Source: Neoechinorhynchus agilis (taxonomy: Eukaryota > Animalia > Acanthocephala). Taken from it: a stretch of 64,000 nucleotides of DNA. Positions 870 through 64,000 of this stretch are shown here, in pieces (position 1 is the stretch's first letter; the number at the start of each line of letters is the position of its first letter). Under the pieces are notes generated by a model, which did no database searches, had not been told where the DNA came from, and saw only the letters and a list, made by a program, of their open reading frames with translations. The stretch covers positions 714,389 through 778,388 of the forward strand of contig CM121343.1 in NCBI GenBank assembly GCA_051530055.1, in the 5' to 3' direction. Position numbers and translations under genes: made by a program.

Positions 870-966
870 ATGAGATCCAGAAGGGGTTATCCGTCAAATA
901 AAAACTCCCTCTTAAAATGCTCGGCGAAACTGGTCGGATTTTTATGTACCGACAATAAAAAATCCA

Positions 967-4740: not shown

Positions 4741-4949
4741 CTATAATCACAGCACGTAGATTTAAGAAAATGAGATTAAAAAACAGATTAGGCGAAATAA
4801 AAAATTCGAACAAATAAAATTACGGATTCGAAATTAGAGAACATAAAAAAATCGAATATCGAAATTAAAAGAACACCGAAGGCGGATTCGTGGTTAAATA
4901 AAAAAATTACTGGCAAAGTTGAATGAAGAGATCAAAAAGAAAACTGCGC

Positions 4950-39175: not shown

Positions 39176-40079
39176 TGTATTTTAATCAAGCTTCACAGGC
39201 GGTCTATACGAGTGCAAAACGTAACTATCCAATATTCCGATTGACTACACGCAGTAAATTCGAAAAATGCTAAAGTTATTGTATGGCCTTTCCGTGAATC
39301 TACGCAAATCGAAACGAAAACCATTCTATGAAGGGGAAAGGCAAGTATTGATGCGAATTATTTTATAGAATTTACTTTTCTATTTTACTGACAAATTTAA
39401 TACCGAACTTTGCGAACGAACAGTTCTAGACAAGATATTGAACCAACATTGTTTTCGATACATGTTCGGTTTTTATACGGCTTCCAACTGCCTCATATTT
39501 TATATCGTGTGCATTCACGCAAAATCAAAAAGTCGATTTAAACTGCGGTTTGTCTAAATACGCAATTGCCGCTTGCGGATTGAAATCCTAAAATCTTACA
39601 TATATTTTAAGCTTCTATTTTAATTCTTTATTCAATCTGAGCGATCTGACGCATCCGAACATTCGTTTCATAATTTTCGCCACAAAAGATAAAATGGATT
39701 GATTTTTATATAGCTTTCGCTTTTGTTTCAAACATACAGAACTTAGTAAAGCGCTGCTTAACGCTTACCATGTTGCTAGAGCAAAATACTCATTTTTAAA
39801 AACTCAGCATGATTGTCGATTTGGATAAACATACTATCGTTCATGAATGAAACCTTTACGTACTTCTTCATTTTTAAAAATAGCGACGGAAAGAGATTTT
39901 GTCCACTTTAGTCAATCTTAATACTAAGCTTAAAATTAGTTACATTGGCATCTTAATAGGTATAAAACATCCTTCTGTTAGTACCATTTTCACCAACCAT
40001 AACAACCCCGCTTGATCGATTTATCGGTGGGTTGCAGTCCATTTTAGTTGATACAACTAAGGCTGCAAAATTTCTGCAC

Positions 40080-40510
40080 CAATCACAAACTTTACCTGAA
40101 CCTCTCTAAATGCTTCGAAATGATCCCCCTAATCTCCCGTATACCCATAACGTACCTCGAGCTTACAAATGACATCTAACGAGTCACCTCGCTCAAAATT
40201 CTGGGTCTACAATTTCAATCAAATCTGAAACGGGACTCCCACATTGCACTTTTCCTCGAGCGTAAAACCATTAAAATTTACCTCTTAAACGCCTCCGCCA
40301 TTTAGGAGTACTTTCGTCCAATTTCTGCAAATTTTACTACAGCTTTATTTTATCCTGCCTCACCTACGGTCATCCCGTCCTTTGAAACCTGTCCAAATCA
40401 CAATAAAGTCCCCTTGAAACGTTTCATAGAAGAGCCTTTAAAATTGTCACAATTGGTTTTCCCCTTTTAAACAAACAATCCTCACAAACTCTTTTACGAC
40501 AAATAACCAC
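40080..40510 (+). mobile_element. Fragment of the CR1-group LINE family (post-RT region)
   Basis: Homologous to 22350-22780 and 54620-55030 (ctctctaaatgcttcgaaatgatcccc...caatttcaatcaaatctgaaa..gggactc). Confidence 0.85.
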
Positions 40511-40569
40511 CAACTTTTTCACCCGATCGGATCAGTCATCCACTTCAAAATCAACAGCCAGATTTAAGG

Positions 40570-41612
40570 AACCCGCTAAGGAGTGTGTAAAAAGACACCT
40601 GCCAAATCGACTGGCCCTGAAAATGGATAGCGCTAGAGACGTACAAATGGCTTGACGTGTAGAAGCGCGTATGCGGTGGTGTTGAGACTTGCACCGTGAG
40701 GTGGAGTGGAGCCGCCGCTAGTGCAGATCTTCGTGGTAGTAGCAAGTATTCAAATGAGAGCATTGAAGACTGAAGTGGAGAAAGGTTCCATGTGAACAAC
40801 ATTTGGACATGGATCAGCCGATCCTCGAAAGGGAATCGGGTTAATATTCCCAAGTCAGGATGCGGTTTATGCTCGATCTATTTAGATGCTCTTCTTGTGC
40901 AGATGATGTTCAGCATAAGTGGTGACACGAGCTATCCCAGAGAATAACTATACGAAGTCTGGAGAAGAGTTTTCTCTTGTTTGTTAGGAACTTTATCCGT
41001 GGAATTAGATCGTCTGTTGATAGGGTACACGTTCCGCAATGCAGCGCAATTCATGCGATGTACCGAGCGCTTCGCATTGTCCTTGAAAATCTGGGTGCGA
41101 GAATATTCAGACCGTACCTGTTCGTACTGATTTCCGCAGCAGGTCTCCAAGGTGAGTAGCCTCTAGTCGATAGGGAAACGTAGGCAAGGGAAGTCGGTAA
41201 ATTAGATCCGTAACTTCGGAAAAAGGATTGGCTCTACAAGCTGAGCTGGCCGGGCTGTCGCGAGAAGCGGTATGTTGTCGACTTTTGTATCTATCTCAGT
41301 TATATGCTCTTGCGAAAGAGTCGAATTCCAGGACGGAACTTGGTGCTGAGTACTGTGGGCAGCGATAGCTATGCTCCGCTTTTGTTCTGCGTATCCAAAC
41401 GGGTACGCTCGCTTCTTGCTCGGGGATCCGATCAACGTTAAACAGCTGGCCTAGAACTGGTATGGACAAGGGGAATCCACTTGTTTAATTAAAACAAAGC
41501 ATTGCGATAGCTGTAATCGGTGTTGACGCAATGTGATTTCTGCAAAAGTGCTCTGAATGTTAAAGTGAAGAAACTCATTTAAACGCGAATAAACGGCGTA
41601 CGTAACTATGAC
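40570..41612 (+). pseudogene. Orphan 28S rRNA gene fragment (~1 kb, D6-D8 region up to the R2 target site)
   Basis: Conserved LSU blocks CCGCTAAGGAGTGTGTAA, GTGCAGATCTT.GTGGTAGTAGCAA, CGAAAGGGAATCGGGTT, CCGCAGCAGGTCTCCAAGGTGA, GATCCGTAACTTCGG, TGTTTAATTAAAACAAAGCAT and AAACGGCG..GTAACTATGAC. It is flanked by transposon debris and has internal deletions. Confidence 0.93.
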
Positions 41613-42030
41613 AAACGATGAATCGCGTAATTCGCACGCGGAAGAAATCATGAAACAAAAGGAAAGGAAATAGCTTCCGAAACGCGAAGCAATAGCAAAA
41701 CGATTCAGCGTCCCTTTAGCCAACGTGGATACTACCGGATTCGACGCGGGTGCACGTGGAAGCTACGCTCCGATATTACTGAAAATGCTAAAACGAATGA
41801 ATTTAAGTTTTGGCTCAGCACTGAACATGTGCCAAACTGCTGCCGCGAAAACACTTATGACATACTACACGACTGAGCTTCTCAACAGGATTATGTGAGG
41901 TTCGTGATGGGATTTTCTCCCTGACGAAAACAGGAGTTCCTAAGGGTCCATAAACCCCGTAATTCATCCTACGGCGGCTCCGGTTCACACCCTAAGTCCA
42001 TTGATAGTGTGCGCCAATATCCGATCGCGG
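41613..42030 (+). mobile_element. 5'-truncated R2 retrotransposon (RLE C-terminus plus putative 3' UTR)
   Basis: The frame reads EEIMKQKERK*LPKREAIAKRFSVPLANVDTTGFDAGARGSY...LKRMNLS...* (stop 41896-41898), resembling the vertebrate R2 C-terminus (Y.P..EAIA...V..VD..GF..GARG). It follows the 28S sequence directly and in the same orientation. Confidence 0.8.
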
Positions 42031-43524: not shown

Positions 43525-45349
43525 ATTATGAGTGGCGAAGAGATTGATCTGGGAAGTTAGCTTTGACGAAAATTTTACCCAATGCCTTTCGGCAGTATGC
43601 GAGCTACGTAAGGAATATGTCCAGGAGCCTGAAAACCGTCGTAGCTTAAATCGCTCGCTTGCTGGACGCGTTTCTTCGAAACTCGCAGATGGGGATGTCA
43701 GAGAAGTTCGCCTTTTATCATCAATTGACAGTCTCGCCAAAGCTAACGAAGAAACTTTACGAACTCTTCGTTCTAAACATTCCATTGACGGCAGCCGGCG
43801 GTATTTCGTGAAGTTCTAATCCTTCGATACGATCTCTTGTGGTTTATCATCGAAATCAGAATTGAAGATGACAATCTCCTATTTTGCTAACGGATCAGCT
43901 CATGGGCTTGATGGTCTCCGGCGCCAACACTTAAAAGAAAATTATTTCCTTTTCAGTGGTTGACGCTGCTCAGTCCCTTGAAGATGCATTGGCACGCTTA
44001 GCCGACCAATTTGCCCGATAGCAATTGAGCTATTTGTCGGCGCATCTTTGTGAACAATCGCGAAAAAGGAAGGTGGGATTCGCCCCATTGCTTATGAAAC
44101 AACTGTGTGCCGCACAGCAGCAAATTTTTTAACTAAAAGGATCATGGAAAAAGTAGGGATGCAGCTTCGCCCGACCCAGTTAGGCTGCTGTAAACCTTGT
44201 GGCGCAGAAGCGATCGTTCATTCACTCCGTACGTTCATTACCGGAAACTCAAAGCCGCGCGTGGTCTTGAAATGTTATTTAAAAAATGCATTCAACACAG
44301 TTCACCGAGCAGATTTGCTCGAAGTAGTTAGAGATCACGCACCAGAAGCATTTCGCAATTTCGTTAATGCCTATGGGACTTCAACTCCCTTGTGGTTCAA
44401 TAACCACGTTTTGTGGTCAGAAAGAGGGGTTCAACAAAGGGACCCTTTTGGCCTTCTCATTCGCAGTCGCGCACTCTCTCCAGTCCTGCTTTAACGGCTG
44501 GAACCTGGACGATGCCACGCTCGGAGGTAACCCTCTGTTGTACTGCGCGATTTGGAGACACTCGTTAAAGAAATGACGAAAATTAGCATTGAACTGAATT
44601 CTGTGAAATGCGGGATTCAGAACATGGCCCCGGGATAGAATTGAACACTCTAGACCGGTTGAGTCTTCAAGGAAGTTGTATTTTTGATTCTAATACGGAA
44701 GCGGAGATTGCCAATCTTCAACCGCAACTTTCGGTGCTGTGCGAACGAGTTGATGAATTATCTTCACACGAGACTGTCCCCGATCAAGAACACCCTCTTG
44801 ATTCCAAAATTGCTATATAAGCTGCACACAGTACCTTTTTAGACATAAGATAAGATGGCAAAATTAGACGAGACGGTGAAAGCCTCTTTCGAGAAAATTT
44901 TAAATACTCAGCTGCCGGACGAGGCCTGGCGTTAGGCGTCCTTGCCTGTATCGTCCGGCGGTTTGGATATCCGCAAAACAGTTGATTTTTTCCGCCAGCT
45001 TATTTGGGATCGTATGAAGCAAGCCGCAAAATAGTTCAATCTTGTCTTTGCGATAATTACACTTTGGATGACGATTTCGTGAAGGCTCTTAATCATTGGT
45101 GTGGAGATTCCGATAGCGAGCAGGTCTCCGTTAATGGTTGCAAACAATTAGTTTGGGACTCTTCCTAGGTAGAATTCATAACTCTTTAATTTCAAATTCT
45201 CGTGACCTGGTGAACCCAACTCGATTGGCGGCAGTCTTTACAAGAGAAACGGTTGCTTGGCTCAACGCTATCCCAATCGCTTCTGTGAGTACCTTTCGGA
45301 CGAAACAGTAAGGATTGCAGTCTCCCTGAGACTTAGGGTACCGATGTGC
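43525..45349 (+). mobile_element. Second CRE-clade remnant (pre-RT, RT and post-RT), multiple stops and frameshifts
   Basis: RVSSKLADGDVR; GGIRPIA; QLGC...GAEAIVH...LKNAFNTV...GVQQRDP; W(N)LDDATL; W.*ASLPV. Confidence 0.87.
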
Positions 45350-47134
45350 CCTCAATTCAAAGCCACTATTATTTTATCTGTGGAGAATGTTAACGATATT
45401 GTACGTTTAATGTTTCTAGCGTCCCCATAGTATTCAACTCCAGAGGCAGAAAGCCCGACCTGCGCCAGAAATTCTACGGCACTTTTTGAATAGCTCAGCC
45501 AAACTCTAATTCGAGTGGATCCACGCGTTAGACTGCGCCTCTAAAGTCACTTAATGGAACCAATTTGTGTGAAAACTTCCAGCCCGGCATCCTCTCTTGT
45601 ATCATAAAACATGGTTTTCCATCGAATTTTTTTCACATTGCGGTGCTACATTGTGAACTCAAAATCCTAAATGGCCTTGGGTGTATGACAGTGGTGCCAC
45701 ATTGGCTGGCACTTTCAAACGCAATACTGAACAGATCCGCTTTTTGGAATACCATTGCAGAACAATTTCTCACTCCGCCGTCTCGTCTTCGTACGTGCCA
45801 TGGATCCACTGCCATAGAGTTCGAAGAATATGGAGAACGGATATGCGTATCCCATTAAGCACTCTAAACAAAACCTTTGTGTATGGCTCCGAACAAATCC
45901 TATAGCAAGAAGGATAGACGAAAGGAACAGACGTGATTCCCTGGTTGTTCTTAATCTGTCCCTCGAGCACCAGCGGTGAGCTATAGATTCTCGATCAGCT
46001 CATACTGACCGAGACAACAAGTGACTTGGGCAGCTTCGTTCATCACTGACAAATCTTATCCAGAAGAGTACTGCTGACCACAAATGGAGAGGCGCGGAGA
46101 AAAGGACGTAAAAACAAATGATTGTCACATTCTGCTGCGTTAGGTAACTACGCCGTTGAACGGTAAAATCTCCCCCTGACTCTGGTATCCACGTCAGATT
46201 GATGACTGCCAGAATCCCACTAAAACTTCATAGTCAAATGACTCTAATAAGTGCTTATGCTCCATCTCTGGATCAAAGTGAAGATAAAAAACTTTCCAGA
46301 ACAATCATCAATGCTCCAGCGACAGTTTTGGAAAAGAAGAACACGCTTGGAAAAACATAAACGAACCCCATGCAATCGTGAAACGCAACAATAACAATGG
46401 ATATCTAATACTTCATCTTTGTGAAGAAATTGAACTACACACTGCAAACACATTTTAAAAGCTGACGAAAAATACAAAAAGTACATAGATAAATTGAAGC
46501 TCTAAACATTGGCTCCTACTTGACCATGTAGAAATGACTAAATGTTTAGCAGACTTCAGAGCCTCCAAATCATTCCCTAAATAGGTCCAATGCTGAAAAG
46601 ACAACAAAATAATAACCTCACTTCAATCAAAATGACACTCCATCGAGCTCCGGTTAGAGTTCGGATTCAAGATTCATTGTTCATTCGAAAAGTGCACTAG
46701 AGCGAAACTGTCAAAGATTCCGAGATGTACTACCCCGAGAGATCCGCTAACTTTCGTTGAAATCTTAAAAGTGTTTTCGAACACTGTTCAGTACGGAACT
46801 TTATCAAGATCTCTCTCCTCATAAGATTGAATAAACTTAAAAAGTTCTTAGTTCAGTGTAAATTGCACTTATTGAACGAAAGTGAGAAAGATTGGATTCA
46901 TCCGCAATTGGGACATATCAAAAGTTACGCCTTTCATTGCCCACTTGACTCAAACATGGTCTTGAAATATGAGCATTTCAGTCCTGAAAACGAGTGAGAA
47001 TCATCGACGTATCCGTTACAATCACAAAATATCATTATTCGCACATCACAGCTTTAAAGACTTTGGCTTAAGACATTGGTCGGAACAGCTCATGCAATTC
47101 GTTTATCATTTCAGGCAATTATCTTATGAAAAAG

Positions 47135-47780
47135 AGATATTTAAGCAATCAACATACAATATTATCCATGCTGATCGATGATGGTATTTTCCGACTACGC
47201 AGTGTAAATGTTACTCAACGCTTAGCGATTAATGGACGTATAACGAAAATGTCGAGACAAAAATTATATACAAACAAATGCTTTTAGAATTAAAATTAAA
47301 AAGTAAAAGTATAATCGTTGGATTATAAAGAAATCCTAAACAAATAGACACTTATCGTTTGTCTACATATTAAAGCAAAGTCCATCTATGATATGCGCAT
47401 CGAAGAAAGCAACCAAGGAGTTATTTGAAAGTATTCGAGTAGTAGACAACTTCAGTATAAGCTATACTTTTTAATAGAACTGAATATTCACATATAATCG
47501 CTGGAAGCTTCTTCGAAACTAGAACTGCTTCTAAATAATCAATAAAAGATGTCAGATCATCCTTTCGAAAATCTATTAAATGTGGATTTTTTTATCCGGA
47601 AATATTATTTTTATGAAATCCGCACACAAAAAGAGAAATAAACATAGCTGAACAAAGTCCGAATGTTTATCTTTTTGGTCACGATAAGGCGTTGAGTAAC
47701 ATTTACACTGTTGAGTCGGCAAATACTACCGTCGATCTGCATGGATAATGCTGTAAATGGATTGCTGAGCTGCTCTGAGA
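47135..47780. mobile_element. MITE-like foldback (~90-100-bp imperfect TIRs), duplicated in the other arm at ~52790-53410
   Basis: attatccatgc.gatcga...ccgact...cagtgtaaatgttactcaacgc at 47161-47223 is inverted at ~47688-47750; no TSD was identified. Confidence 0.65.
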
Positions 47781-48599
47781 AATGTCTGAAATCAAAAGCA
47801 TGGAAGCTCTAAAGAATACATTAACGGAAGTCAATTATACCTTTTTATTATATCGGATGCGTTTTGGATTCTCATACGTTTCATTACTAAAATACTCCTA
47901 GACAATGTCCGAGTCAAGTTGGCAATGTTGGGCGTCTTTTATGATATATCGACACCACAGATAAATCAAGTCTTTCTCTCTCTCGTTCAAACCAATTTTC
48001 TAAAATATCAATTTATGTCAGGAGGTAAGAAACAAAGGAAAATGTTACAAATTTGGTTTACTAACAACGAAACGGCTCAAAGTTGGATACCTCGAATCAT
48101 CATGGAAGACTCAATATCCGCATTTGAACTCAATTGAACTAAGAACAATCGCGAAAAAGGGGACAAAGGAGTCCGCTACTTTGGCTCTTTGAAATGAATT
48201 TGAATAACGCAATCAACAAAGCGAAATTCTTGACAATTATCGTATTGGGATGCAGTGATTAATTGGAAGAAATAAAAACGTTCAATGAGCAACGTAACCA
48301 GAATCTTCATTTAAACGTTGATAAATCGGGCAACAAAAGTTCAAAGTTCAATCGCCAAAATTCGCTCGATGGTAAGCACAATCAAGAAAGAGCGAAATTG
48401 GCAGAGACTTTACAAATCCTTCATGTAAGCCGCTTAAGATTGCAATTACCGACCACATAACCCAAATTCGTCTAAGGCCTACAATGAAACTAATCAAATT
48501 ATCCACTCGATCATAAAGACGAAGACTAAAGTTCGGTTGTTCAACAATAAAGAAATATTCCTCTTAAACATTCTCAAGGAGAAGAGAAGCATTGATCCG

Positions 48600-50100
48600 A
48601 ATAACGGGATATACAGAATAAAGTGATAGACTTTTTACCGGATAAAACGATGTGGGGCAAATGAGAATCACAAAAACATAAGCAGGTCTACAGCCGATTT
48701 GGGCACTATTCCGCTAAATCCAATAACCAAGATATTCTGTAAAATCCCGTAGATTTTCATGGCCCGCATTTTGTGGAGAGAGAACTGAACCCTAAAAGGT
48801 GCCTTGTCCCGTCCAACTCCCTGGGAAGGAAACAAGACTTTGGCTAAAACTATCGGCGAGCGGCTTGTTGAAAATTGACGATCCCTCAATTTAGATTGAA
48901 ATGCATTTGCAATGTACTGCACAGACTGACTGCGGTGGACACTTCACTTTCCTATGGCAATATCAAGAGATCCATAGATAGTGGAAGCACGATATTTGAA
49001 CGAACCACAGCCTGACGATCCACGTGGAGCAATGGGCAAGAATCACTTTTCCATCCGGAACTGTTAAAATGATTGTTGATTCTGGCACCGGAAGGTAATC
49101 GAGTAGACAACTTCATTACCTCTCTGAATTCAACAGTGAGAACTGTTCGTATTTTTCATGTCCAGCTACGAGTGAGAATTTATCCGACGAAAGGACAACG
49201 ATATCGCTGCTGTACAGCGAGTCTTAGAAGAAAATGATGTTGTTAGAGCCGAAATAGTAGTTATTTTGACGAGCAACTACTGCAGCACCGGCTTCTATAC
49301 AAACTACGAAGGTTTTTTTTATCGATGGAATACGAAATTCCGAGTCAATTTATCAAATATAGGAACTTCGGGCGTGCAAAATGTCAACCATGGCAAAAAG
49401 TGGCATTCAGATCTGATGCAAAGCAGGAAGTGAGCTTTGCTTTGTATCTGGTTGATTCGGAGAGTCATTTAGGGAGGCGATGGCGATTACCCCAATTTCA
49501 TCAGTGGTTTGTTCTTTAAATTCGACCTGTTCAAAATGTTATTAACGGTGTTTCATGCAATCTCCGGGACAGGAGTTGGTCACTTGTCCGACGATGTGCA
49601 TAGCAGGAGCGATCAGCCGGTACAAAAATAACAATGGCAGCAAAGTACCAACATCCATTGTTGTTGTTTACAGCGACGGCCAGCTCGGATATATCGGGAT
49701 GAGTGAACGTCAACAAATTCTCAAATCGATTAGTATGGTCGTTGGATCAAGTGAAAACGAAGCGCCGAAGCCAATAATCACGTACATTGTAGTAAAGAAG
49801 CGAATCGATTTCCGATTCTTCATATTGGGCAGTCCAAACGAACCTTTGACCAACCCCATTAGCGGTCTTGTTGTTGGAAGAATTTTTGACGGTGGAACGA
49901 TGGAGAGATTTCTATATTGTGGCACAAAGAGTTACTCAAAGTTCAGCGACGTAACTTCAACATCCAGGCGGATAAAAACGAGTTCTCGATGGACGAAATG
50001 CAGCAAATCTCCTATAAGTTGTGAGCAATAGGAGTGCCACCAGCGATCGCATTCACCTTAAACAGAATACAATTTCAAAATCATTTCATAAATGACACTA
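48600..50100 (+). pseudogene. Piwi-clade Argonaute pseudogene, left copy (PAZ remnant, MID and PIWI domains)
   Basis: EIVVILTSN; EIPSQFIKYRNF; AKSGIQI*CKAGSELCFV; SSVVCSLNSTCSKCY*RCFMQSPGQELV; VYSDG; ITYIVVKKRIDFRFF; NPISGLVV. These align with the Piwi motifs VPSQ, KIALQMNCKLGG, VASLN..TRWYSR..Q..GQEL, YRDGVGDGQ and FIVVKKRI..RFF. Stops and frameshifts are present. Confidence 0.88.
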
Positions 50101-50659
50101 TTCGACCTCCGAAGATAATCTTGATCCTTCATTATAATCGTTTTTCGTCCAAAAACCTTTTTCTGAATTTATGCCAACTTTGATTAGGGCGGCAAATGTC
50201 CTCTGTAGCGTGGAATTCCTTTGATTTTGTTTCTAAGTGCAAGTCCGAAGATTAGAACACCACGAAGAATAAATCGCAAATCGCTGAACATCACGTACGA
50301 GAATCCATAAAATCTATAACGGTCGTTGCTATTCAGGTTCCGATCGAGATTTGGCTTTGGTGATGATTGATTACTCAAATAAAAATACGCTACCCTTCGT
50401 CCGTCAATTGCGGTGTCTTCATAATAAAAAGTGGAGAAGTTGCATAATCAATACGTAGAATACTAAAGAACTCCTTGAGCATCGCCATGGCAACCAAACC
50501 ATCGATAAAATCACAAAATTAGCGTTCCCTTGGATACGGAAGAACTTACAATTCAATTCTTAGACGTTGTTTTGATTTGGTAGTTATAGAAAACTGGTCT
50601 CATGGCGACTTCGTCTTCCTTATGCCGCTTCTCAAGCGTCCCCAATCTTTAGACCATTG

Positions 50660-51950
50660 AGGGAATCTCTCCATCGTCCCAAGTTCTGCCAACAACAAGA
50701 CCGTCATCGAGATTTGTTTGGACTGCCCAATATGAAGAATCGGAAATCGATTCGCTTCTTTACTACAATGTACGTGATTTTTGGCTTCGGCGCTTCGTTT
50801 TCACTTGATCCAACGACCATACTAATCGATTTGAGAATTTGTTGACATTCACTCATCCCGATATATCCGAGCTGGCCGTCACCAATTCCGTCGCTGTAAA
50901 CAACAACAATGGATGTTGGTACTTTGCTGCCATTGTTATTTTTGTACCGGCTGATCGCTCCTGCTATGCACATCGTCGGACAAGTGACCAACTCCTGTCC
51001 CGGAGATTGCATGAAACACCGTTAATAACATTTTGAACAGGTCGAATTTAAAGAAGAAACCACTGATGAAATTGGGGTAATCGCCATCGCCTCCCTAAAT
51101 GACTCTCCGAATCAACCAGATACAAAGCAAAGCTCACTTCCTGCTTTGCATCAGATCTGAATGCCACTTTTTGCCATGGTTGACATTTTGCATAAAGTTC
51201 CTATATTTGATAAATTGACTCGGAATTTCGTATTCCATCGATAAAAAAACCTTCGTAGATTTGTATAGAAGCCAGTGCTGCAGTAGTTGCTCGTCAAAAT
51301 AACTACTATTTCGGCTCTAACAACATCATTTTCTTCTAAGACTCGCTGTACAGCAGCGATATCGTTGTCCTTTCGTCGGATAAATTCTCACTCGTAGCTG
51401 GACATGAAAAATACGAACAGTTCTCACTGTTGAATTCAGAGAGGTAATGAAGTTGTCTACTCGATTACCTTCCGGTGCCAGAATCAACAATCATTTTAAC
51501 AGTTCCGGATGGAAAAGTGATTCTTGCCCATTGCTCCACATGGATCGTCAGGCTGTGGTTCGTTCAAATATCGTGCTTCCACTATCTATGGATCTCTTGA
51601 TATTGCCGTAGGAAAGTGGAAGTGTCCGCAGTCAGTCTGTGCAGTACATTGCAAATGCATTTAATCTAAATTGAGGGATCGTCAATTTTCAACAAGCCGC
51701 TCGCCGATAGTTTAGCCAAAGTCTTGTTTCTTCAGGGAGTTGGACGGGACAAGGCACCTTTTAGGGTTCAGTTCTCTCTCCACAAAATGCGGGCCATGAA
51801 AATCTACGGGATTTTACAGAATATCTTGGTTATTGGATTTAGCGGAATAGTGCCCAAATCGGCTGTAGACCTGCTTATGTTTTTGTGATTCTCATTTGCC
51901 CATCGTTTTATCGGTAAAGTCATATCACTTTATTCTATATCCCGTTATTC
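50660..51950 (-). pseudogene. Piwi pseudogene, right (inverted) copy
   Basis: Mirror of the left copy; it retains YSDGIGDGQLGY, shares the TGA and TAA stops, and is truncated earlier at the 3' end. Confidence 0.88.
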
Positions 51951-53974
51951 GGATCAATGCTTCTCTTCTCCTTGAGAATGTTTAAAAAGAGGAATATTTC
52001 TTTATTGTTGAACAACCGAACTTTAGTCTTCGTCTTTATGATCGAGTGGATAATTTGATTAGTTTCATTGTAGGCCTTAGACGAATTTGGGTTATGTGGT
52101 CGGTAATTGCAATCTTAAGCGGCTTACATGAAGGGTTTGTAAAGTCTCTGCCAATTTCGCTCTTTCTTGATTGTGCTTACCATCGAGCGAATTTTGGCGA
52201 TTGATCTTTGAACATTCGTTGCCCGATTTATCAACGTTTAAATGAAGATTCTGGTTACGTTGCTCATTGAACGTTTTTATTTCTTCCAATTAATCACTGC
52301 ATCCCAATACGATAATTGTCAAGAATTTCGCTTTGTTGATTGCGTTATTCAAATTCATTTCAAAGAGCCAAAGTAGCGGACTCCTTTGTCTTCTTTTTCG
52401 CGATTGTTCTTAGTTCAATTGAGTTCAAATGCGGATATTGAGTCTTCCATGATGATTCGAGGTATCCAACCTTGAGCCGTTTCGTTGTTAGTAAACCAAA
52501 TTTGTAACATTTTCTTTGTTTCTTACCTCCTGACACAAATTGATATTTTAAGAAAATTGGTTTACGAGAGAGAGAAAGACTCGATTTATCTGTGGTGTCG
52601 ATATATCATAAAAGACGCCCAACATTTATAACCGGCTCGGACATTGTCTAGGAAGTATTTTAGTAATGAAACGTATGAGAATCCAAAACGCATCCGATAT
52701 AATAAAAAGGTATAATTGACTTCCGTTAATGTATTCTTTAGAGCTTCCATGCTTTTTATTTCAGACATTTGTCAGAGCAGCTCAGCAATCCATTTACAGC
52801 ATTATCCATGCAGATCGACGGTAGTATTTGCCAACTCAACAGTGTAAATGTTACTCAACGCCTTATCGTGACCAAAAAGATAAACATTCGGACTTTGTTC
52901 AGCTATGTTTATTTCTCTTTTTGTGTGCGGATTTCATAAAAATAATATTTCCGGATAAAAAAAATCCACATTTAATAGATTTTCGAAAGGATGATCTGAC
53001 ATCTTTTATTGATTATTTAGAAGCAGTTCTAGTTTCGAAGAAGCTTCCAGCGATTATATGGTAATATTCAGTTCTATCAAAAAGTATAGCTTATACTGAA
53101 GCTGTCTACTACTCGAATACTTTCAAATAACTCCTTGGTTGCTTTCTTCGATGCGCATATCATAGATGGACTTTGCTTTAATATGTAGACAAACGATAAG
53201 TGTCTATTTGTTTAGGATTTCTTTATAATCCAACGATTATACTTTTACTTTTTAATTTTAATTCTAAAAGCATTTGTTTGTATATAATTTTTGTCTCGAC
53301 ATTTTCGTTATACGTCTATTAATCGCTAAGCGTTGAGTAACATTTACACTGCGTAGTCGTCAAATACCATCATCGATCAGCATGAATAATTCTGTATGTA
53401 GATTGCTTAAATATCTCTTCTTTATAAGACAATTGCCTTAATTGATAAGCGGATTGCATGAGCTGTTCGGGCCAATGTCTTAAGCCAAAATCATTATAGC
53501 TGTGATGTGCGAATAATGATATTTCGTGATTGTAACGGATACGTCGATGATTCTCACTCGTTTTCAGGACTGAAATGCTCATATTTCAAGACCATGTTTG
53601 AGTCAAGTGGGCAATGAAAGGCGTAACTTTTGATATGTCCCAATTGCGGATGAATCCAATCTTTCTCACTTTCGTTCAATAAGTGCAATTTACACTGAAC
53701 TAAGAACTTTTATCAGTTTATTCAATCTTATGATGAGAAAGATCTTGATAAAGTTCCGTACTGAACAGTGTTCGAAAACACTTTTAAGATTTCGACGAAA
53801 GTTAGCAGATCTCTCGGGGTAGTACATCTCGGAATCTTTGACAGTTTCGCTCTAGTGCACTTTTCGAATGAACAATGAATCTTGAATCCGAACTCTAACC
53901 GGAGCTCGATGGAGTGGCATTTTGATTGAAGTGAGGTTTGGATTTTGTTGTCTTTTCAGCATTGGATAGATTGA

Positions 53975-56939
53975 TAATTATATGAATTACACGTTTTTTG
54001 TTAAAGAAACAAAGAATTGAAGGGCTCATGTACTTTTGGGTGTTCATTAGCATTCAAGTTCACAATTGTTCAAAAAACGTATCCGTTAGGATTGGAATAT
54101 CCAGTCGACGGGGCATCCGTTCGGTTGGGAATATCTAGTCGGTGGGATACCTATTCGTGTGGGTGTGACATTCCTTGAAATACTTAGTTAACGTTTTTTA
54201 ATATTCGTCCAGATAACACACACACACGAACAACGGTCAACACGATGGGTAACATTGATTGGCCACGTCAGCATGCCGCTACTTATCATAGTGAGAACTA
54301 TCTAGTCGGGGACGGTTCGTTCGGGTGAGGATGTGTCCGTTCGTTTGATAATATTCGGTTGGATTGGAAGGCGCGTTTTGGGAATTGGCGGGTATTGTTT
54401 GCAGGAACGCTTGTAAGGTTGGTCTTTCTTCAGGTTCATTCCAAGTTCTGATATCCAAGATGATTGGACAGCATGGAAATTGGAGCGTAGGTATAGTGAG
54501 GTTCGACGTCAAGGGAGGATGAAACGATTTAGGATCGCGAGTGTTGTGCTCGTGTTAAAAGGGAGCGATGTGTTGTAGAAATTGTGGTTCAACAGTTGAT
54601 AGGCGTTTTGATTGTTTAATGAAATAGTATCAATTCATTCGGTGAGAGGGGGAAAGTGAGTTGTGCAAATTTTAGATGCTCTTTTATGAAGAATTTCAAG
54701 ACGGCGGATTAGCAATTTGGAAAGGTTGCAAAATACGGGATAACCGTGGGTAAGGGAATATAAAATAAAGTAGAAGTAACATTTGGATAGATCTTATGAA
54801 AGGATTCCTAAATGTCGGAGGCATTTGAGGAGATAAATTTTAAAGGCGTTGTGCTTGAAGGAGAGAGTGATGTGCGAGTCCCATTTCAAATTTGATTGAA
54901 ATTGGATACTCAGAATTCTTACAGAGGTTACCCGTAAGATGTCATTTAGAAGATCGAGATACGTTATGGGGATTCGGGAGATTGAGGGGATCATTTCGAA
55001 GCATTTAGAGAAATTCAGATGGAGTTTGTGATTGGTTCAGAAATTTTTGTGTGCGATTTCGTTAGAGGCTAAGTAGAGGGAGAGGTGGGGTGATATCGTC
55101 GGCGTATAAGAAGAGTTTAGAGTGAGCGGAGAGAGGTTTGAGGTCGTTTAGAAAAATATTAAAGAGAAGTGGTGACAGTACAGCGCCTTGAGGTACGCCT
55201 TTGGTGATGGAAAGGCTGATAGAAGAGGTAGAACGGCAGTGAATGTATTGTTTACTATTGTGAAGATAAAATTCGAGCCAGCGGATCTGCCACAAGTTGA
55301 TACCAAAATTGGAGCAGGCCCGGAGGAGTGAACTGTCCACTGAGTCGAAAGCTTTAGATAAATCAAGCTGAATGAGACTGGTGACGTTGGAGGGATTATT
55401 GTCGAGGTTACGTAGGAGTGTGTCATAAATGCAAAGTAGGGTATCGGTTGCAGAAAATCTGGGCCGGAAGCAAAATTGCAGGGGCGATAACTTTTCGTTG
55501 AGAAGTGAAAGAAGGCGAGGTTTAAAACATTTTTTCGGTGACTTTTGAAAGAGCGGGTAGAATGGAAATTGGACGGAATGATTCGGCCGAAATAAGGTGT
55601 CATCTTTTGGAACAAGGATAACTTTAGCACTTTTTAGGAATGAGGGGTAGATGCCGTATAAAGAGCTGAGGTTTATAATGTGGGTAAGAGATCGATGAGT
55701 TCGGGATGAGCAAGCGAAGAGCCCAGTTTGGGGTTTCGGATTGAAAGGGCAAATTTTTAAGTAATATCATGAAATACTTTGGTACCTCATATCGGTGAGT
55801 TGACAAAAGTTTCAGCTGTGGGCGTGGAGGATTGTGTGGAGACTGACGTTGAGCAGTGATTGCAAATTGAGTCATGGCAGGATTTCTGATTAATGGAATC
55901 TAGAATCTGTTTTAATTCAGTGGAGGACAAATTAGTGAAGGGGTCCGGGTGGCGTAGACCAACAGAGCCCTTGACGGCCTACCACTATGTTGAGTTGCCA
56001 CCTGATAGAATTTTAGAGGAAAGGAAGTTATTGCTGTCGATAAGATTTTTGTTAGTACTTTTTGTAAACGGGAAGAGTCTGCGGGATTATTGCGATGGAC
56101 CTTAGAAGCTTGCCTTTGTATAAGTTTCCGAATGGGGATCATCCATGGAGGGTCGCTGTTGAAGATCTTAATGAATTTCTTGAGAGTTGTTGAAGCTATG
56201 GAATTTTTTATGATTGAGGTAATCGAGGACATGGCCAAGGAAGATTCATTTGTGTTGTCAGAGTGGGATGTGCGGATGTTAGAGTTGAACAATTTTATAA
56301 AATTTTGGATGTGATGATCACGTTTATCCCAGACGGGTAAACGGGGAGATTTCATACGCTGAGGTGGGGTGGATGGAGTGATTAGGGCAGAGGAATGGTC
56401 AGAGTTCGCGGGGGGGGAGGGAGTTTTGAGGCGGATGAGTAGGCTTCGATATTTGTGAACACTTTGTCGAGGTGAGGGTCAAGACCAGTTGGGAAGTCAA
56501 TAAGTCGACGCAACTTGGTGAAGGGTAGAAGAGGAAATAGATTATTGAAGCCCCCTGCAATTAAGAAATGGTGTGAATTTGCGGAGTTTATGAGCTCCAT
56601 CGTAGACTCAATTTGTAGCAAGGACTCAGGACGGGAGGCCGGAGGGCGATAGACGGCAGCAATGGTGAATTTTCTAAAGCCCTTTCTTAGAGGAGCTATA
56701 AATTGGACTGCGATGAATTCTAGACCTGGGTTCGGTGGAGAGCCCGTGAGAGATAAAGAGTATGGTAGCGATTGCCGTACGTAAATTGAGACCCCCCTCC
56801 TGGACGGTCCTCGCGATGTACCCGGGAAGGATGGCTGTATTGCTGTTGTACGGGATAAGCCATGTTTCTTTTAAGATGTTTACGTCGACTTTTGAGGTAG
56901 ATGAAATGAGTGAAATTTCATCTAGTTTAAAAAGGAGGC
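53975..56939 (-). mobile_element. Second copy of the CR1-group LINE (ORF2 only; 5' part lost at a CRE junction)
   Basis: Highly similar to 22000-24710; QGAVLSPLLFNIFLND and LYADDIT; 3' end motif shared with the first copy. Confidence 0.92.
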
Positions 56940-57245
56940 ACCCGGGGAGCAGCAACCGCCGCTGAGGAACGCAAAAAGACAAAATACAGGGCCTGAGTCG
57001 AAATCATTATTTTGCTCCCTTTGGCGTCGAGACGCTCGGGTCGTTTTGTACCGCGGCGCAGGACCTGGTCAAGCATAAGAGATTGAGACGAATCAATGGC
57101 GATCCGAGATCAGGAGCATTCCTGTTGTAAAACATAAGTCCGGCTGTGCAACGAGGGAACGCTGCATCCATCATTTCAACCGTTACACCGGGATGGCAGC
57201 TGAGTGATCCAGAGCGGTGGTGTGAATGATTTCACGACATTTATA
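56940..57245 (+). mobile_element. 5'-truncated CRE 3' fragment joined into the LINE APE region
   Basis: cccggggagcagcaaccgccgctgaggaacgcaaaaagacaaaatacag... is near-identical to the reverse complement of 61710-62010. Confidence 0.9.
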
Positions 57246-57299
57246 AATAGAATCCACTAAAAACTGATTAATTTCGCCCAGGTCAGAGAAATAGTTACA

Positions 57300-60200
57300 A
57301 GACAGAAGCAGACAAGTGACTGCGTTGTACAATTGATCTTTTAGTCTTCCAAACTTGAATTTACGGGAGTTTTGCTTTTAATGGGTTAATTATTTCTGAT
57401 AGAAGTATTGTCAATGGCATGTCTCTTTGTTTTCATTAAGAACGGATTATACGCATTAACTTTGGTTTCTCTAGAAGGTTTTAATGAAATAATCATAGAA
57501 GCTGTAAATTCTAATCTTTTAACCAAGTCTTTTATAAAACGATCGTTCGACTACAAAATGGCTACTGCCTATTATAAGATTGCTGTTGTTGTAGAACCGA
57601 AAACGTGGTTTTATTTTGCTAACGGAACCGCGAAAACGTTTCATGGTACAACGAACGATAACGGTTAGTAATCGATAATATAATTACATTTATGATGTAG
57701 TCGAAACTAATCGATATCACAATCTTCCATCGTGTTCGATTGTTTCCCTGGTCTCCGGCAAGACCGTCTGACTTCTCTCCCGTCTTCCATTATATACTTC
57801 GAGCCCATTCGACTAAAATCCGAATCCAATCCAGTATAGTCACCCTGAGTGCCGCGTTCCGGTATTTCAGTACTATTGTGCTTAGATCTTGATTCAGTAG
57901 TTTGAGATCACCAGTCGTTTGAGCGATATCCGACCCATACGGGGCTAGACGTTGGGTTGAAACGACGCCTTGTCGTCCATCAGCGTATTGGATCAACGAA
58001 TGCTTTTCGCCCCCACTTATTGGAGTTACTTCATCCACTTCATTCTCGTACTTGGACTTTCTGTTCAGATTCTCGAGGTATGCCTTATCACTTGATACAA
58101 TCCAACTTGGTGGTGGCCTGGATGTCATACTCCTTCTTGGATAATTGAATATTCGTTCATGAGACGTTTGCCCCGTACTGGTGCAGAGAAGTGTTCGTAT
58201 TTTCGAAAGTGCCTCATGGAGGACCTGGGGCCAATTATTTAAAGGAAGATCTTGATCTGCAAGCAAGAGCTGGATGGTTTTCCACACTGTTCCATTGTAG
58301 CGTTCACATTGGCCGTTGCCTTGCGTGTGGAACGCAGTCGTGTGACTGAGGCAAACGTTCTGTGCATTTAGCCATTCTCGAATATCCTTGCAGGTGAAAG
58401 AAGCTCCTCGGTCAGAGTGGACGTAATCAGGACGCAAGCAAATGCGATTGGGAACCGCGAATATTCGTCTACGGCGACTAATAAATACAGCGGACCGCTT
58501 GCTGTGGACGGTAATGGACCTTTGAAGTCCACAGATATTCGTTCGAATGGTTTGGTGGCTTTGATCAAATGTGGACCAGAAGATTTGAAAAATCTTGGTT
58601 TTATTCGGCAGCATACCGAACAAGATGCCGTTACTTTTCTTATTTCCTCCGTAGAATAAGGAAGATTATTTTGTTTGATGTAGTGGAGCATCCTGGTGAC
58701 ACCTGGATGTCCTAATTTTCGGTGAACTTCGTGGATCTGAGTCAGAATAGAGGATACGCTCGCACATGAATCGCGTGATAGTACATCCGCAGCTAGATTA
58801 GAAGCTCCAGCTCGATACTTTAGTGTATAAGTATAACTTGAAAGTTCCAGCCTCCATCGTAATATGCGTTCGTTTCTAATCTTTTTGAATGTTTTTGATT
58901 GAGCATAAAGGATACTGATCTTTGATCCGTAATCACGACGAACGGACGGATAGCTAAGTAGTACCGCCAATGTTTTATTGCCTCGATAAGTGCGTACGCC
59001 TCCTTTTCCACTATGTGATATCGTTTTTCATGTTTATTCAGTGTTTTGGAAAAAAATGCGACAGGTAGCCCATCCTGGAAAAGAGCGGCTCCAATTGCTT
59101 TTTCAGAAGCATCAGTTTCGAGTACGAATTGCTTATCCTCATCTATGCTATGCATGACAGCGTTTTTGATGTCTTTTTCAAGGTATCAATCAATATTGCA
59201 GTTTGTTCGCATAGAGGAAAATCCAAATTTTTGCACACCAGCGGTTGAATCCTTTTAGAGTAGTTCGGGATCCATTTACTATAATAGGCAAAAAATCCCA
59301 TCAGGCGTTGTATAGATGCTTTGTTGGTGGGTAGTACTATGTCATTTAGAGACTTGAGACGATTTGGGTCCGGTCTTAGTTGGCCGTTACCAATTTCGTA
59401 ACCAAGTACCAGAATTCGTTCTACCCCATATACGCTTTTATCGTTATTGAATTTTAATCCTTTCTTGGCAGCAATATCTCGAAATTGTCACTAGTTTTTA
59501 TCATGCTCGCTCTTCGTTTGTCCGCAAACAATGACATCGTCGAGATATGCATATGTATTTGATAAATTGTTAGCTTCGATGATATTATTCATATACCTCT
59601 GAAATGCGGATACCCCACTGGTAACGCCCATCGGGATTTTTGTAAAGCGGTAGAGCTCACCGCATGCTTCAAAAGAGGTATAGTCTCTCTCATGAGGGGC
59701 AATTGATACTTGATAATATGCATCTTCCAAGTCTAACCGGCTAAACACCTTATTTGTTGCTATTTTGTTGACGATCGTTTCGATACGTGGAAGAGGGTAA
59801 GCATCTAGATAATTGAATTTGTTAATAGTTTGGCTAAAGTCTACAACGAGTCTCTTTTTTCCATTTTCGTTGTTAACCACGAGGACCTGTGCCCTCCATG
59901 GTGAATCGGATTTTTCGATTATGCCATCTTTAAGCATGCGACCGATCTCGGATTTAATAAAGATGATGCCGCGTTGATTGTAGCATTGGGATCGAGTTGC
60001 GATCGGTTTACAGTCGGCGGAAAGATTATTGAACAAACAAGGCGCCAAATCAGATTTTGTTGTCGACTCTTGATCAAGTACAGGAATAAGTAACGCAGCT
60101 AGATTCAGTTCGATTGACGGCTCACTGCCTGACATTCTCAAGCGGAACTCTCTGTGCAGTCTTAAAAACGGCAATCCAAGAACTACGTCGCTGCAAAGAT

Positions 60201-61000
60201 CAGTCAACAGGTATAGTTCCACGCGACTGTACATCGTTCCGTCGTATCGAATATCGGCCCTAACCTTGCCCAGAGTTCTCCTTGTAGTGTTACCAGAGGC
60301 TAACGAAACGTTTGAGTAGGACGGCTCCAATCGATGAAATTGAGGGAACTCCCAGTATCAAGCAAAGCAGAGAAGGTTACATCTTGTATCAATACCGGAA
60401 TCATGAGAGAATAATCCTTTATCGAACTCTTATCCTTTTTAGTAGCAGCTAAGTAGACCGAAGACAAGTTAGCGTTGTTAGCTTTTTTTGACCGACACAC
60501 TCTCGTGAAGTGTCCGAGTTTTTGACACGTATAGCACTGTACTTCGGCGGCAGGGCATAATTTGCGAGGATGTCGTTTCCTCCCACAAAAATTAGCTTTG
60601 CAAGTAAAACCTTCACTTTGAAGTAATAAATCAACACTCCAACTTTACACGTATTCTCTTCTTTTGTGAAAAGTTCATTTTCTGCAGTTCTGAAATGTTG
60701 TGAAGATGCAATGTATCCAAGAACGAAAATGTGCTTTTTACCATTCCCGAAGCATTGTTTTGGATTATCAGAGTCCGGATAAAGTTGATGATTCACACAA
60801 TCAGCTTACTATTACCGTCCGTTTCATAAATCCTCGTGAGATCGCCATTAGAAGTAAGAACAATGTTCAGAAGATGCAGTTCATCACGAGTGCAATCGCA
60901 AAATGCTTGGTGGTGAAATAATCATTTTTGGACCTTGCTCGGTGAAACATTTCGATTAGGGAAGAAATACTTAAGCCCAAACAATTTGCCATCAACTGAA
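57300..61000 (-). mobile_element. Ty3/Gypsy LTR retrotransposon remnant (gag zinc knuckle, PR, RT, RNase H, integrase); no LTR pair seen
   Basis: PR LLDTGSS; RT SPWRAQVLVV...RLVVDFSQTIN...DAYPLPRI...YAYLDDV; RNase H LETDASEKAIGA...EKEAYA...TDQ; IN HRKLGHPGV...C..C, ISVDFKGP and GNGQCERYN. A possible purine tract and TG LTR start lie at ~57721. Outer limits are uncertain. Confidence 0.9.
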
Positions 61001-63625: not shown

Positions 63626-64000
63626 ATAGTATATAATTATTTGTTTCAGTTCAATACATCTAGAAACGGCAACTTTCCGGTTTCATCGGACCTATTCATG
63701 TTCATTGAGAGGATTATTTCGAGATACACGAGAGTATCAGCGATTTCCGTACAGAAAAACTTTTTCAATCGCGTAAAACAATTTCAATTGCGGTCAAAGC
63801 AAATTATTTTTTAAATAACGCGACGATGAATAAAGCCTAAAAAGATACGAACAAAAGCATTTTGATTTTTGTTGCCATCGGTGTTCATGCATTAGTCCAA
63901 TAATTCATTCTCAGGATCATATCACAACGAAAGTTTAAATGAAATTGCACTTTGGCGGTCTGTTGGATGAGAATATTCTTAAACATTTCTGTGCAGCATC

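What the first reader, a model, noticed from the sequence alone, without database searches (positions are those of the whole stretch)
46586..53966. 7.4-kb inverted duplication holding two convergent Piwi pseudogenes: candidate hairpin-RNA locus targeting the piRNA machinery
Seen in sequence: ~3.3-kb arms, each with a Piwi MID/PIWI pseudogene pointing to the centre. The TGA (QI*CK) and TAA (CY*RC) stops are shared, so the gene was already dead when it was duplicated. The arms later diverged slightly; for example, the left arm lost 12 bp (IGDG) between GACGG repeats. Established knowledge: long inverted repeats and pseudogenes produce endo-siRNAs or piRNAs that repress parental genes (Drosophila hpRNAs, mouse oocyte pseudogenes). 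Inference: read-through transcription would give kilobases of Piwi dsRNA, a possible feedback regulator of the functional piwi gene, or a burden on it, inside a transposon graveyard.
Basis: partly seen in the sequence, partly recalled or inferred. Interest (0 to 1): 0.8.

Follow-up and report, generated by a model that had tools for sequence, protein, structure and literature searches.

The report
Inverted duplicate of dead PIWI gene
A long-dead copy of a PIWI (transposon-defence) gene in a thorny-headed worm was partly copied back-to-back, so its RNA could fold into a long hairpin, but nothing here shows that it is transcribed or regulates the working PIWI genes, and it looks like ordinary genomic debris.

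Summary
The structure is real. The arms are 46586-49911 (+) and 53966-50664 (-), about 96-97% identical, around an asymmetric 752-bp spacer. The genome is Neoechinorhynchus agilis (GCA_051530055.1, CM121343.1).

Only the inner ~1.0-1.15 kb of each 3.3-kb arm is PIWI-derived (after PAZ, MID plus most of the PIWI domain). The outer 2.3 kb is a non-coding insert.

In total five in-frame stops and at least six frameshifting indels are shared, so the gene was dead before the duplication.

New findings:
- The whole palindrome recurs 19 kb downstream, beyond the window. There the left arm follows the 5' half of the same pseudogene, so the left arm is the original.
- The nearest intact genes are four intronless PIWI copies on another chromosome. 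They are only 78% (gapped) or 84% (ungapped) identical in DNA.
- About 2% of 21-mers match them perfectly, no more than neutral decay predicts.

A hairpin would form if the locus were read through, but transcription, small RNAs and targeting remain untested. An earlier scan note reports another PIWI palindrome 188 kb upstream; I could not reach it.

Verdict: an ordinary inverted segmental duplication of a pseudogene and a weak hairpin-RNA candidate.

The parts
46586..49911 (+). Left arm of the palindrome (L_A)
   Evidence: reverse-complementary to 53966-50664 at 96-97%. The outer boundary is sharp and has no target-site duplication.
46586..48876 (+). Non-Piwi insert 'X' forming the outer two thirds of the arm; non-coding
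   Evidence: No blastn or tblastn similarity to any N. agilis PIWI. No credible Pfam hit (none near its gathering threshold) on the plus-strand reading-frame pieces tested; the minus-strand pieces were only listed, with no long ORF among them. In copy B it separates the 5' and 3' parts of the same pseudogene.
46872..47990 (.). Older, decayed nested inverted repeat inside X (arms about 46872-47221 and 47689-47990)
   Evidence: arm pairs 46872-46970/47892-47990 at 73% and 47144-47221/47689-47766 at 83%.
48877..50023 (+). PIWI pseudogene, 3' part, left copy (about codons 397-801 of P0151: linker/MID plus the PIWI domain, nearly to the C-terminus)
   Evidence: aligns to P0151 gene nt 1188-2402, 78.6% gapped and 84.1% ungapped, with 5 in-frame stops and 9 frameshifting indels. 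Pfam Piwi hit; domain limits.
49912..50663 (.). Asymmetric 752-bp spacer: 49912-50023 is the left copy's continuing PIWI sequence, the rest is non-Piwi
   Evidence: No Pfam hit. 50189-50345 resembles a short repeat seen upstream of copy B. The spacer is 752/752 identical to that of copy B.
50664..53966 (-). Right arm of the palindrome (R_A), the inverted partial copy
   Evidence: It carries right-arm-specific 11-bp and 7-bp deletions that are shared with the right arm of copy B.
50664..51683 (-). PIWI pseudogene, right copy (about codons 397-761 of P0151), truncated inside the PIWI domain; keeps the IGDG codons
   Evidence: gene nt 1188-2284, 77.9% gapped and 84.5% ungapped, with the same five stops. 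Pfam Piwi E 4.4e-14.
54351..57529 (-). Decayed non-LTR retrotransposon on the right flank, duplicated together with the palindrome
   Evidence: 85-89% identical to 22135-24707, whose 436-aa ORF has Pfam RVT_1 at 1.1e-18. The direct duplication runs 46857-57529 against 65807-76759 in extended coordinates (window + L003).
63739..64000 (+). Start of the second copy's pseudogene: a homologue of the 5' flank of the intact PIWI gene (it continues beyond the window end)
   Evidence: L002 4461-4770 (upstream of the P0151 gene) matches 63739-64027 at 72%. CDS codons 17-328 follow at extended positions 64164-65016.

Best explanation
This is a relic, not a device.

**History of the locus.**
1. A paralogue of the intronless PIWI genes of Neoechinorhynchus agilis (the lineage of ACOME3_007209, P0151) arose by DNA-level duplication. 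It then accumulated stops and frameshifts and was split by a non-coding insert of at least 2.3 kb that replaced the end of the PAZ region.
2. A fold-back type inverted duplication then copied part of the insert plus the MID/PIWI part (up to about codon 761) into a site 0.75 kb downstream. This made a palindrome with 3.3-kb arms.
3. The arms acquired their own indels.
4. A block of at least 10.7 kb holding the palindrome and the neighbouring retrotransposon was then duplicated 19 kb away. The window holds this secondary copy (A). The copy still attached to the gene's 5' half (B) starts at the window's end.
5. Patchy differences among the four arms point to gene conversion, or to consensus noise in the assembly.

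**What is shown and what is inferred.** The anatomy and the order of events are shown. The fold-back mechanism is inferred.

**Consequence.** If the locus is transcribed it will fold into long dsRNA and yield small RNAs as a by-product, mostly without a PIWI target. Regulation of intact PIWI genes is not expected to be strong.
For: **Identity of the locus.**
- The nearest intact gene, P0151, is intronless (2541 bp for 846 aa) and belongs to a cluster of four >90% identical copies on CM121342.1.

**State of the pseudogene.**
- It is 78% (gapped) or 84% (ungapped) identical to P0151 in DNA.
- dS is 0.37-0.38 for both the 5' and the 3' parts, which fits one gene.
- In copy B the 5' flank and codons 17-328 lie directly upstream of the left arm.
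- Homology to the intact gene extends 540 bp upstream of the start codon, which argues against a retrocopy.

**Order of events.**
- Five stops and at least six frameshifts are shared by all four arms.
- Left-arm-specific and right-arm-specific indels are shared between copies A and B.

**No sign of selection for targeting or pairing.**
- Perfect 21-mers number 7-26 per arm, against about 29 expected from uniform decay.
- The low arm-to-arm divergence in the Piwi part comes from private changes of R_A.

**Other checks.**
- No Rfam family lies in the locus, and no target-site duplication or transposon ends bound it.
- A nested older inverted repeat, together with earlier scan notes of other young inverted gene-fragment duplications in this genome, suggests a common mutational process.
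Against: - The hairpin potential is real and large.
- N. agilis has an active piRNA pathway with a ping-pong signature and clustered piRNA loci (PMC12256650). A repeat-rich locus like this could well be a small-RNA source.
- Some perfect matches to the intact PIWI genes exist, up to 31 nt at 48984, and about 25% of 21-mers have two mismatches or fewer.
- Copy B keeps a homologue of the intact gene's upstream region, which could still drive read-through.
- A second PIWI palindrome is reported 188 kb upstream. If it formed independently, recurrence would hint at selection.
Confidence: 0.7

Rival explanations
1. It is a functional hairpin-RNA (endo-siRNA) locus. A transcript reading through both arms is diced into siRNAs, and these repress the recently amplified intronless PIWI genes (ACOME3_007209 family) in trans. 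The analogy is the Drosophila hpRNAs that derive from their targets.
For: - A 3.3-kb near-perfect stem with a 752-nt loop.
- 18-26 perfect 21-mers per arm in three of the four arms, and one 31-nt perfect match to P0151.
- The target family is a young four-copy expansion, the kind of gene family that hpRNAs suppress in D. simulans.
- There is precedent for an hpRNA carrying sequence of a piRNA factor and making siRNAs against it: hp-ODox1 and Tapas (PMC10317233).
- Copy B retains the homologue of the gene's upstream region.
Against: - Two thirds of the stem is not Piwi.
- DNA identity to the nearest intact gene is only 78-84%, and perfect 21-mers are no more frequent than neutral decay predicts.
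- The Piwi part shows no excess arm-to-arm conservation once the private changes of R_A are accounted for.
- The copy in the window (A) lacks the gene's 5' part and promoter region.
- AATAAA motifs lie in the spacer, read directly.
- No transcript or small-RNA evidence could be obtained.
Confidence: 0.1
2. It is a passenger inside a piRNA cluster. The repeat-rich region is a piRNA source locus, and the PIWI fragment merely contributes some PIWI-antisense piRNAs, whether or not a hairpin forms.
For: - The window is a retroelement graveyard: non-LTR RT ORFs at 22.2-25.6, 54.3-57 and 57.8-60.3 kb, R2-like ORFs at 42-45.4 kb, and an orphan 28S fragment.
- N. agilis piRNAs are clustered and show a ping-pong signature (PMC12256650).
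- piRNA targeting tolerates mismatches, and about 25% of 21-mers have two or fewer.
Against: No small-RNA mapping could be done. The strand bias of the transposons is only partial: the R2-like element is on the plus strand and the others are on the minus strand. Being repeat-rich does not make a region a piRNA cluster.
Confidence: 0.15
3. It is an assembly artefact. A fold-back chimeric nanopore read or a mis-join created the inversion, and the second copy is an uncollapsed haplotype.
For: - The assembly is a MaSuRCA/Flye hybrid built mostly from R9.4 nanopore reads of a pool of about 50 worms (PMC12690905).
- Identity between copies A and B is mosaic: 752/752 in the spacer and 384/384 in the flank, but about 1.5-5% divergence in patches of the right arm and 2.6% across the retrotransposon.
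Against: - The arms differ by about 2.5% substitutions plus 24 indels.
- The spacer is unique and asymmetric, and continues the left gene copy.
- Arm-specific indels are reproduced in both copies, whereas a fold-back chimera gives identical arms and no spacer.
- A and B have different left flanks, there are no Ns between them, and purge_dups was applied.
- Doubt remains only about the A/B duplication, not about the palindrome.
Confidence: 0.04

Closest known systems
Drosophila hairpin-RNA (hpRNA) loci, e.g. hp-ODox1 of D. simulans, whose inverted repeat carries about 200 bp of the piRNA factor Tapas (PMC10317233)
   Same: An inverted duplication of sequence derived from a protein-coding gene of the piRNA pathway, mixed with repeat or transposon sequence, and able to form a long intramolecular duplex.
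   Different: For those loci, Dicer-2-dependent siRNAs, defined transcripts and target de-repression have all been shown. None of that is shown here. The stem here is much longer (3.3 kb), only one third of it is gene-derived, and it is only 78-84% identical to the nearest intact gene.
Pseudogene-derived endo-siRNA sources of mouse oocytes (inverted-repeat pseudogenes and pseudogene/parent duplexes; Tam et al. 2008 and Watanabe et al. 2008, cited from my own knowledge)
   Same: A dead gene copy arranged as an inverted repeat that could give dsRNA homologous to a living paralogue.
   Different: The mouse cases are close in sequence to their parent genes (from my own knowledge), and the small RNAs were sequenced. 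Here the pseudogene is old (dS about 0.37 to its nearest relative) and no RNA data were examined.
Ordinary fold-back inverted segmental duplications and palindromes with arm-to-arm gene conversion
   Same: Arms with a short unique spacer, sharp breakpoints without target-site duplications, later re-duplication of the whole block, and a mosaic pattern of arm differences.
   Different: Nothing essential differs. The only special point is that the cargo is a PIWI pseudogene.
Processed (retrotransposed) pseudogene
   Same: Intronless and truncated relative to the full gene within each arm.
   Different: The parent gene family is itself intronless. Homology extends 540 bp upstream of the start codon in copy B. 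No poly(A) tail or target-site duplication is present.

Membership tests
hpRNA / endo-siRNA hairpin locus | Long inverted repeat able to form an intramolecular RNA duplex | tested here: met
   3.3-kb arms at 96-97% with a 752-nt loop. The inner 1451 nt folds with the arms paired (-772 kcal/mol).
hpRNA / endo-siRNA hairpin locus | One transcription unit that spans both arms | not testable with these tools
   No RNA-seq mapping is available. Exact-protein look-ups and cluster look-ups returned only the genome record. The intact PIWI genes are likewise found only in the genome record, so this negative carries no information.
hpRNA / endo-siRNA hairpin locus | Dicer-type 21-23-nt small RNAs from both arms | not testable with these tools
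   Public small-RNA data for N. agilis exist (PMC12256650) but cannot be mapped here.
hpRNA / endo-siRNA hairpin locus | Extended antisense complementarity to a target gene | tested here: inconclusive
   78-84% DNA identity to P0151, 7-26 perfect 21-mers per arm (about 29 expected from neutral decay), longest perfect match 31 nt.
Functional PIWI-clade Argonaute gene | Uninterrupted reading frame covering the N, PAZ, MID and PIWI domains | tested here: not met
   five in-frame stops and 9-11 frameshifting indels per arm. Codons 1-396 are absent from the arms.
PIWI-derived sequence (homology only) | Significant match to the Piwi domain, closest to PIWI-clade rather than AGO-clade proteins | tested here: met
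   (PF02171, E 4e-14). (top PDB hits are Piwi-like 1, Siwi and Piwi-A). (57-66% amino-acid identity to N. agilis P0151).
Processed pseudogene (retrocopy) | Loss of the parent's introns, a poly(A) tail, target-site duplication, and no homology beyond the transcript | tested here: not met
   The parent is itself intronless. No A-run follows the gene end. No target-site duplication. The 5'-flank homology extends 540 bp upstream in copy B.
Foldback or TIR transposon carrying a captured gene fragment | Terminal inverted repeats flanked by a target-site duplication, with copies in unrelated flanks | tested here: not met
   No target-site duplication. The only other copy shares 3.5 kb of right flank, so it is a segmental duplicate and not a new insertion.
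piRNA cluster | High density of reads of about 27-32 nt, with 1U or ping-pong signatures | not testable with these tools
   Only the transposon-rich context could be shown.

The most novel reading that the evidence does not exclude
The palindrome, especially copy B which keeps the gene's upstream region, is a transcribed hairpin. Its siRNAs or piRNAs restrain the young four-copy expansion of intronless PIWI genes. That would be an hpRNA-versus-amplified-gene conflict like Dox/Nmy, but aimed at the piRNA machinery itself and found in a parasite lineage where endogenous RNAi has not been studied. The second PIWI palindrome reported 188 kb upstream would then be a further, possibly independent, suppressor.
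Probability: 0.08. Interest if true: 0.7.

Novelty: new member of a known kind. Interest (0 to 1): 0.3.

Why it matters
If the locus is silent, it is one more example of how readily this repeat-rich acanthocephalan genome makes inverted duplicates of gene fragments. It also flags a public gene model (ACOME3_008711) that is really a pseudogene piece.

If it is transcribed and processed, it would be a rare animal case of the small-RNA machinery being targeted by small RNAs made from its own dead paralogue. It would also be the first hpRNA-type locus in Syndermata.

The test is cheap, because small-RNA and mRNA libraries for this species are already public.

Tried and rejected
**Rejected readings.**
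- Retrocopy origin: the parent is intronless, the 5'-flank homology extends upstream of the start codon, and there is no poly(A) tail or target-site duplication.
- LINE 3'-transduction or twin priming as the source of the right arm: the left arm has no mirrored LINE or 384-bp flank.
- Foldback transposon: no target-site duplication, and the two copies share a flank.
- The inverted pair 44553-45349 / 63075-62282 as part of a larger palindrome: both members are copies of an R2-like retroelement.
- Selection for pairing in the Piwi part: the lower divergence there is due to private changes of R_A and appears equally in the direct R_A-R_B comparison.

**Searches that found nothing.**
- Pfam on all spacer reading frames.
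- Pfam on the plus-strand frames of the insert: only chance-level hits below the gathering thresholds. The minus-strand frames were only listed.
- Rfam over 40-64 kb: only the 28S fragment.
- Tandem repeats in the locus: none.

**Attempts that were not informative.**
- I tried to reach the PIWI palindrome noted 188 kb upstream, and any other short PIWI-fragment ORFs. Two protein searches (P0272 and P0151:590-740) returned only the two ORFs of this locus.
- I looked for transcripts through exact-protein and cluster look-ups. Only the genome record came back. Intact PIWI genes behave the same way, so this says nothing.
- The held supplement of the transcriptome paper is a single document, so no expression table could be searched.


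Full report
**Observation.** The inverted repeat is real.
- The repeat finder breaks it into eight collinear blocks.
- blastn joins them into one alignment, 46586-49839 against 53966-50716, at 96.8% over 3276 columns with 58 mismatches and 24 gap openings.
- A more permissive search extends it to 49910/50664.
- Both inner ends carry a significant Piwi-domain match (PF02171, E 5.9e-11 and 4.4e-14), and the best solved structures are PIWI-clade proteins.

**Organism and parent gene.**
- An exact look-up of the 158-aa ORF places the window on chromosome CM121343.1 of Neoechinorhynchus agilis, GCA_051530055.1. Record position equals window position plus 714,388.
- A library-wide HMMER search and a follow-up homologue search found the annotated N. 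agilis PIWI proteins.
- By tblastn the closest is P0151 (ACOME3_007209, 846 aa), at 57-66% amino-acid identity. The other paralogues score 24-49%.
- P0151 is encoded by an uninterrupted 2541-bp gene on CM121342.1. It represents a cluster of four >90% identical copies.
- Its PAZ domain covers residues 289-380 and its Piwi domain 533-829.

**Anatomy of the arms.**
- At the DNA level only gene nt 1188-2402 align, to 48877-50023 on the left arm (78.6% with gaps, 84.1% without).
- Gene nt 1188-2284 align to 51683-50664 on the right arm (77.9% and 84.5%).
- Each 3.3-kb arm therefore holds about 1.0-1.15 kb of PIWI sequence, running from just after PAZ through MID into the PIWI domain.
- The outer 2.3 kb (46586-48876) has no PIWI similarity, no ORF with a credible Pfam match, and an older decayed inverted repeat of its own at 46872-47990.
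- The spacer (49912-50663) is asymmetric. The left copy continues to about codon 801, while the right copy ends at about codon 761.

- Read in the frame of P0151, all copies share in-frame stops at codons 431, 470, 585, 598 and 637. They also share frameshifting indels, for example deletions of 5, 17, 5 and 2 nt.
- QI*CK and CY*RC are at the stated places in both arms.
- The 12-bp loss between GACGG repeats is in the left arm. The right arm keeps GIGDG, as the intact gene does.
- The gene was therefore dead before it was duplicated.

**A second copy, and which arm is the original.**
- The annotated protein P0273 (ACOME3_008711) clusters with the left-arm ORF but maps 18.95 kb further on, beyond the window.
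- I joined the window and locus L003 into a 78,979-bp sequence, used below as 'extended coordinates'. In it, 46857-57529 is directly repeated at 65807-76759 in two collinear blocks (97.9% over 46857-56939, 94% over the last ~560 bp), palindrome included.
- Immediately upstream of the left arm of this copy B lie a homologue of the 540 bp upstream of the P0151 gene and codons 17-328 of the same pseudogene. They occupy extended positions 63739-65017, and the first 262 bp are inside the window.
- dS to P0151 is the same for the 5' and 3' parts (0.37 and 0.38; dN/dS 0.44 and 0.33). They are therefore one gene split by the insert.
- It follows that the left arm is the original pseudogene, the right arm is the inverted partial copy, and copy A (the finding) is a secondary segmental duplicate that lacks the gene's 5' half.
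- The upstream-flank homology, the intronless parent, and the absence of a poly(A) tail or target-site duplication argue against retroposition.

**Order of events.**
- The 12-bp deletion, a 1-nt insertion and a 5-nt deletion are confined to the left arms of both copies.
- An 11-nt and a 7-nt deletion are confined to the right arms of both copies.
- The sequence of events was therefore: gene death, inverted duplication, divergence of the arms, then direct duplication of the block.

**Mosaic differences between copies A and B.**
- The spacer (752/752) and the 384-bp right flank are identical. The right arm of A carries about 58 private changes in patches, and the retrotransposon flank differs by 2.6%.
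- L_A and R_B are the most alike (98.7%), and R_A and L_B the least (95.6%).
- This fits a very recent duplication followed by gene conversion. It also fits consensus noise in a hybrid assembly made from pooled worms (PMC12690905).
- The palindrome itself is not in doubt. Its arms differ by structured indels that appear in both copies, and the spacer is unique.

**Does it work as a hairpin RNA against PIWI?**
- If read through, the RNA would fold. The inner 1451 nt folds with the arms paired at -772 kcal/mol.
- Two thirds of the stem is not PIWI.
- Against P0151, 7-26 of about 1000-1127 21-mers per arm are perfect matches. About 8-10% have one mismatch or fewer, and about 25% two or fewer. The longest perfect run is 31 nt, at 48984.
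- At 84% ungapped identity, uniform decay predicts about 29 perfect 21-mers (0.84^21 x 1127, my arithmetic). Complementarity has therefore not been kept above the neutral level.
- The Piwi part shows lower arm-to-arm divergence in copy A (0.9% against 2.4%, p = 0.005). The same contrast appears in the direct R_A-R_B comparison (p = 0.002) and is absent for L_B-R_B and L_A-R_B. It reflects patches private to R_A, not selection for pairing.
- Copy A lacks the gene's promoter region. Copy B keeps a decayed homologue of it.
- No RNA evidence could be obtained. Exact-protein and cluster look-ups return only the genome record, and they do so for intact PIWI genes as well.

**Context.**
- The locus sits among retroelement remains. 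A non-LTR element abuts the right arm (54351-57529, family of 22135-25600; RVT_1). Another RT ORF lies at 59491-60330, R2-like ORFs at 42-45.4 kb, and a 28S fragment at 40000-41757.
- The literature shows that N. agilis has PIWI genes and clustered piRNAs with a ping-pong signature, and that small-RNA libraries exist (PMC12256650).
- D. simulans has an hpRNA (hp-ODox1) whose arms derive from the piRNA factor Tapas and which makes siRNAs against it (PMC10317233).
- A full-text search for 'piwi pseudogene' found no paper.
- Earlier notes of this scan report other young inverted duplicates of gene fragments in this genome, many PIWI relics, and another PIWI palindrome 188 kb upstream. I could not reach that locus.

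**Verdict.** The most likely reading (about 0.7) is an inert inverted segmental duplication of an old PIWI pseudogene. A functional anti-PIWI hairpin (about 0.1) and membership of a piRNA cluster (about 0.15) remain open. Both can be decided by mapping public small-RNA and mRNA reads.

Noticed in passing
L003:7535-14659 (window-extended 65807-72931; CM121343.1:780,195-787,319): A second copy of the whole palindrome lies 18.95 kb downstream, beyond the window end. Its spacer and 384-bp right flank are identical to copy A, but its arms differ from A in a mosaic pattern. Its left arm follows the 5' half of the same PIWI pseudogene (L003:5467-6745).
   Followed up: yes
L003:10001-10707: The public gene model ACOME3_008711 (KAL7667990.1, 187 aa, 'hypothetical protein') is a spliced model laid over the left-arm PIWI pseudogene of copy B. 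It is almost certainly a mis-annotated pseudogene fragment.
   Followed up: partly
window:50857-53657: The right arm of copy A carries about 42 private substitutions and 16 private indels in patches (20 mismatches within 53257-53657). L_A and R_B have almost none. This suggests conversion tracts from an unseen diverged copy, or local consensus error.
   Followed up: partly
window:46872-47990: An older, decayed inverted repeat (arms of about 350 bp, 70-83% identical) is nested inside each arm of the young palindrome. The region has therefore formed fold-backs more than once.
   Followed up: partly
window:1006-3720 and 4915-7647: Two tandem arrays show up in the self-comparison. One has a period of about 125 bp at about 98% identity over 2.7 kb. 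The other is more diverged (82-88%), with offsets that are multiples of about 180 bp.
   Followed up: no
window:40000-45430: An orphan 28S rRNA fragment (Rfam LSU_rRNA_eukarya, model positions 439-3401 with large internal gaps) is followed by R2-like reverse-transcriptase and zinc-knuckle ORFs. A 797-bp piece (44553-45349) recurs inverted at 62282-63075 at 97.4% identity.
   Followed up: partly
window:19933-20496: An ORF with a class-C GPCR (7tm_3) domain match (E 1.2e-8) lies among the repeats. It is a possible gene or a gene fragment.
   Followed up: no
L002:5001-7541 (CM121342.1): The intact PIWI gene ACOME3_007209 has no introns and belongs to four >90% identical copies on one chromosome (ACOME3_007162, 007165, 007178, 007209). 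This is a recent PIWI gene expansion.
   Followed up: partly
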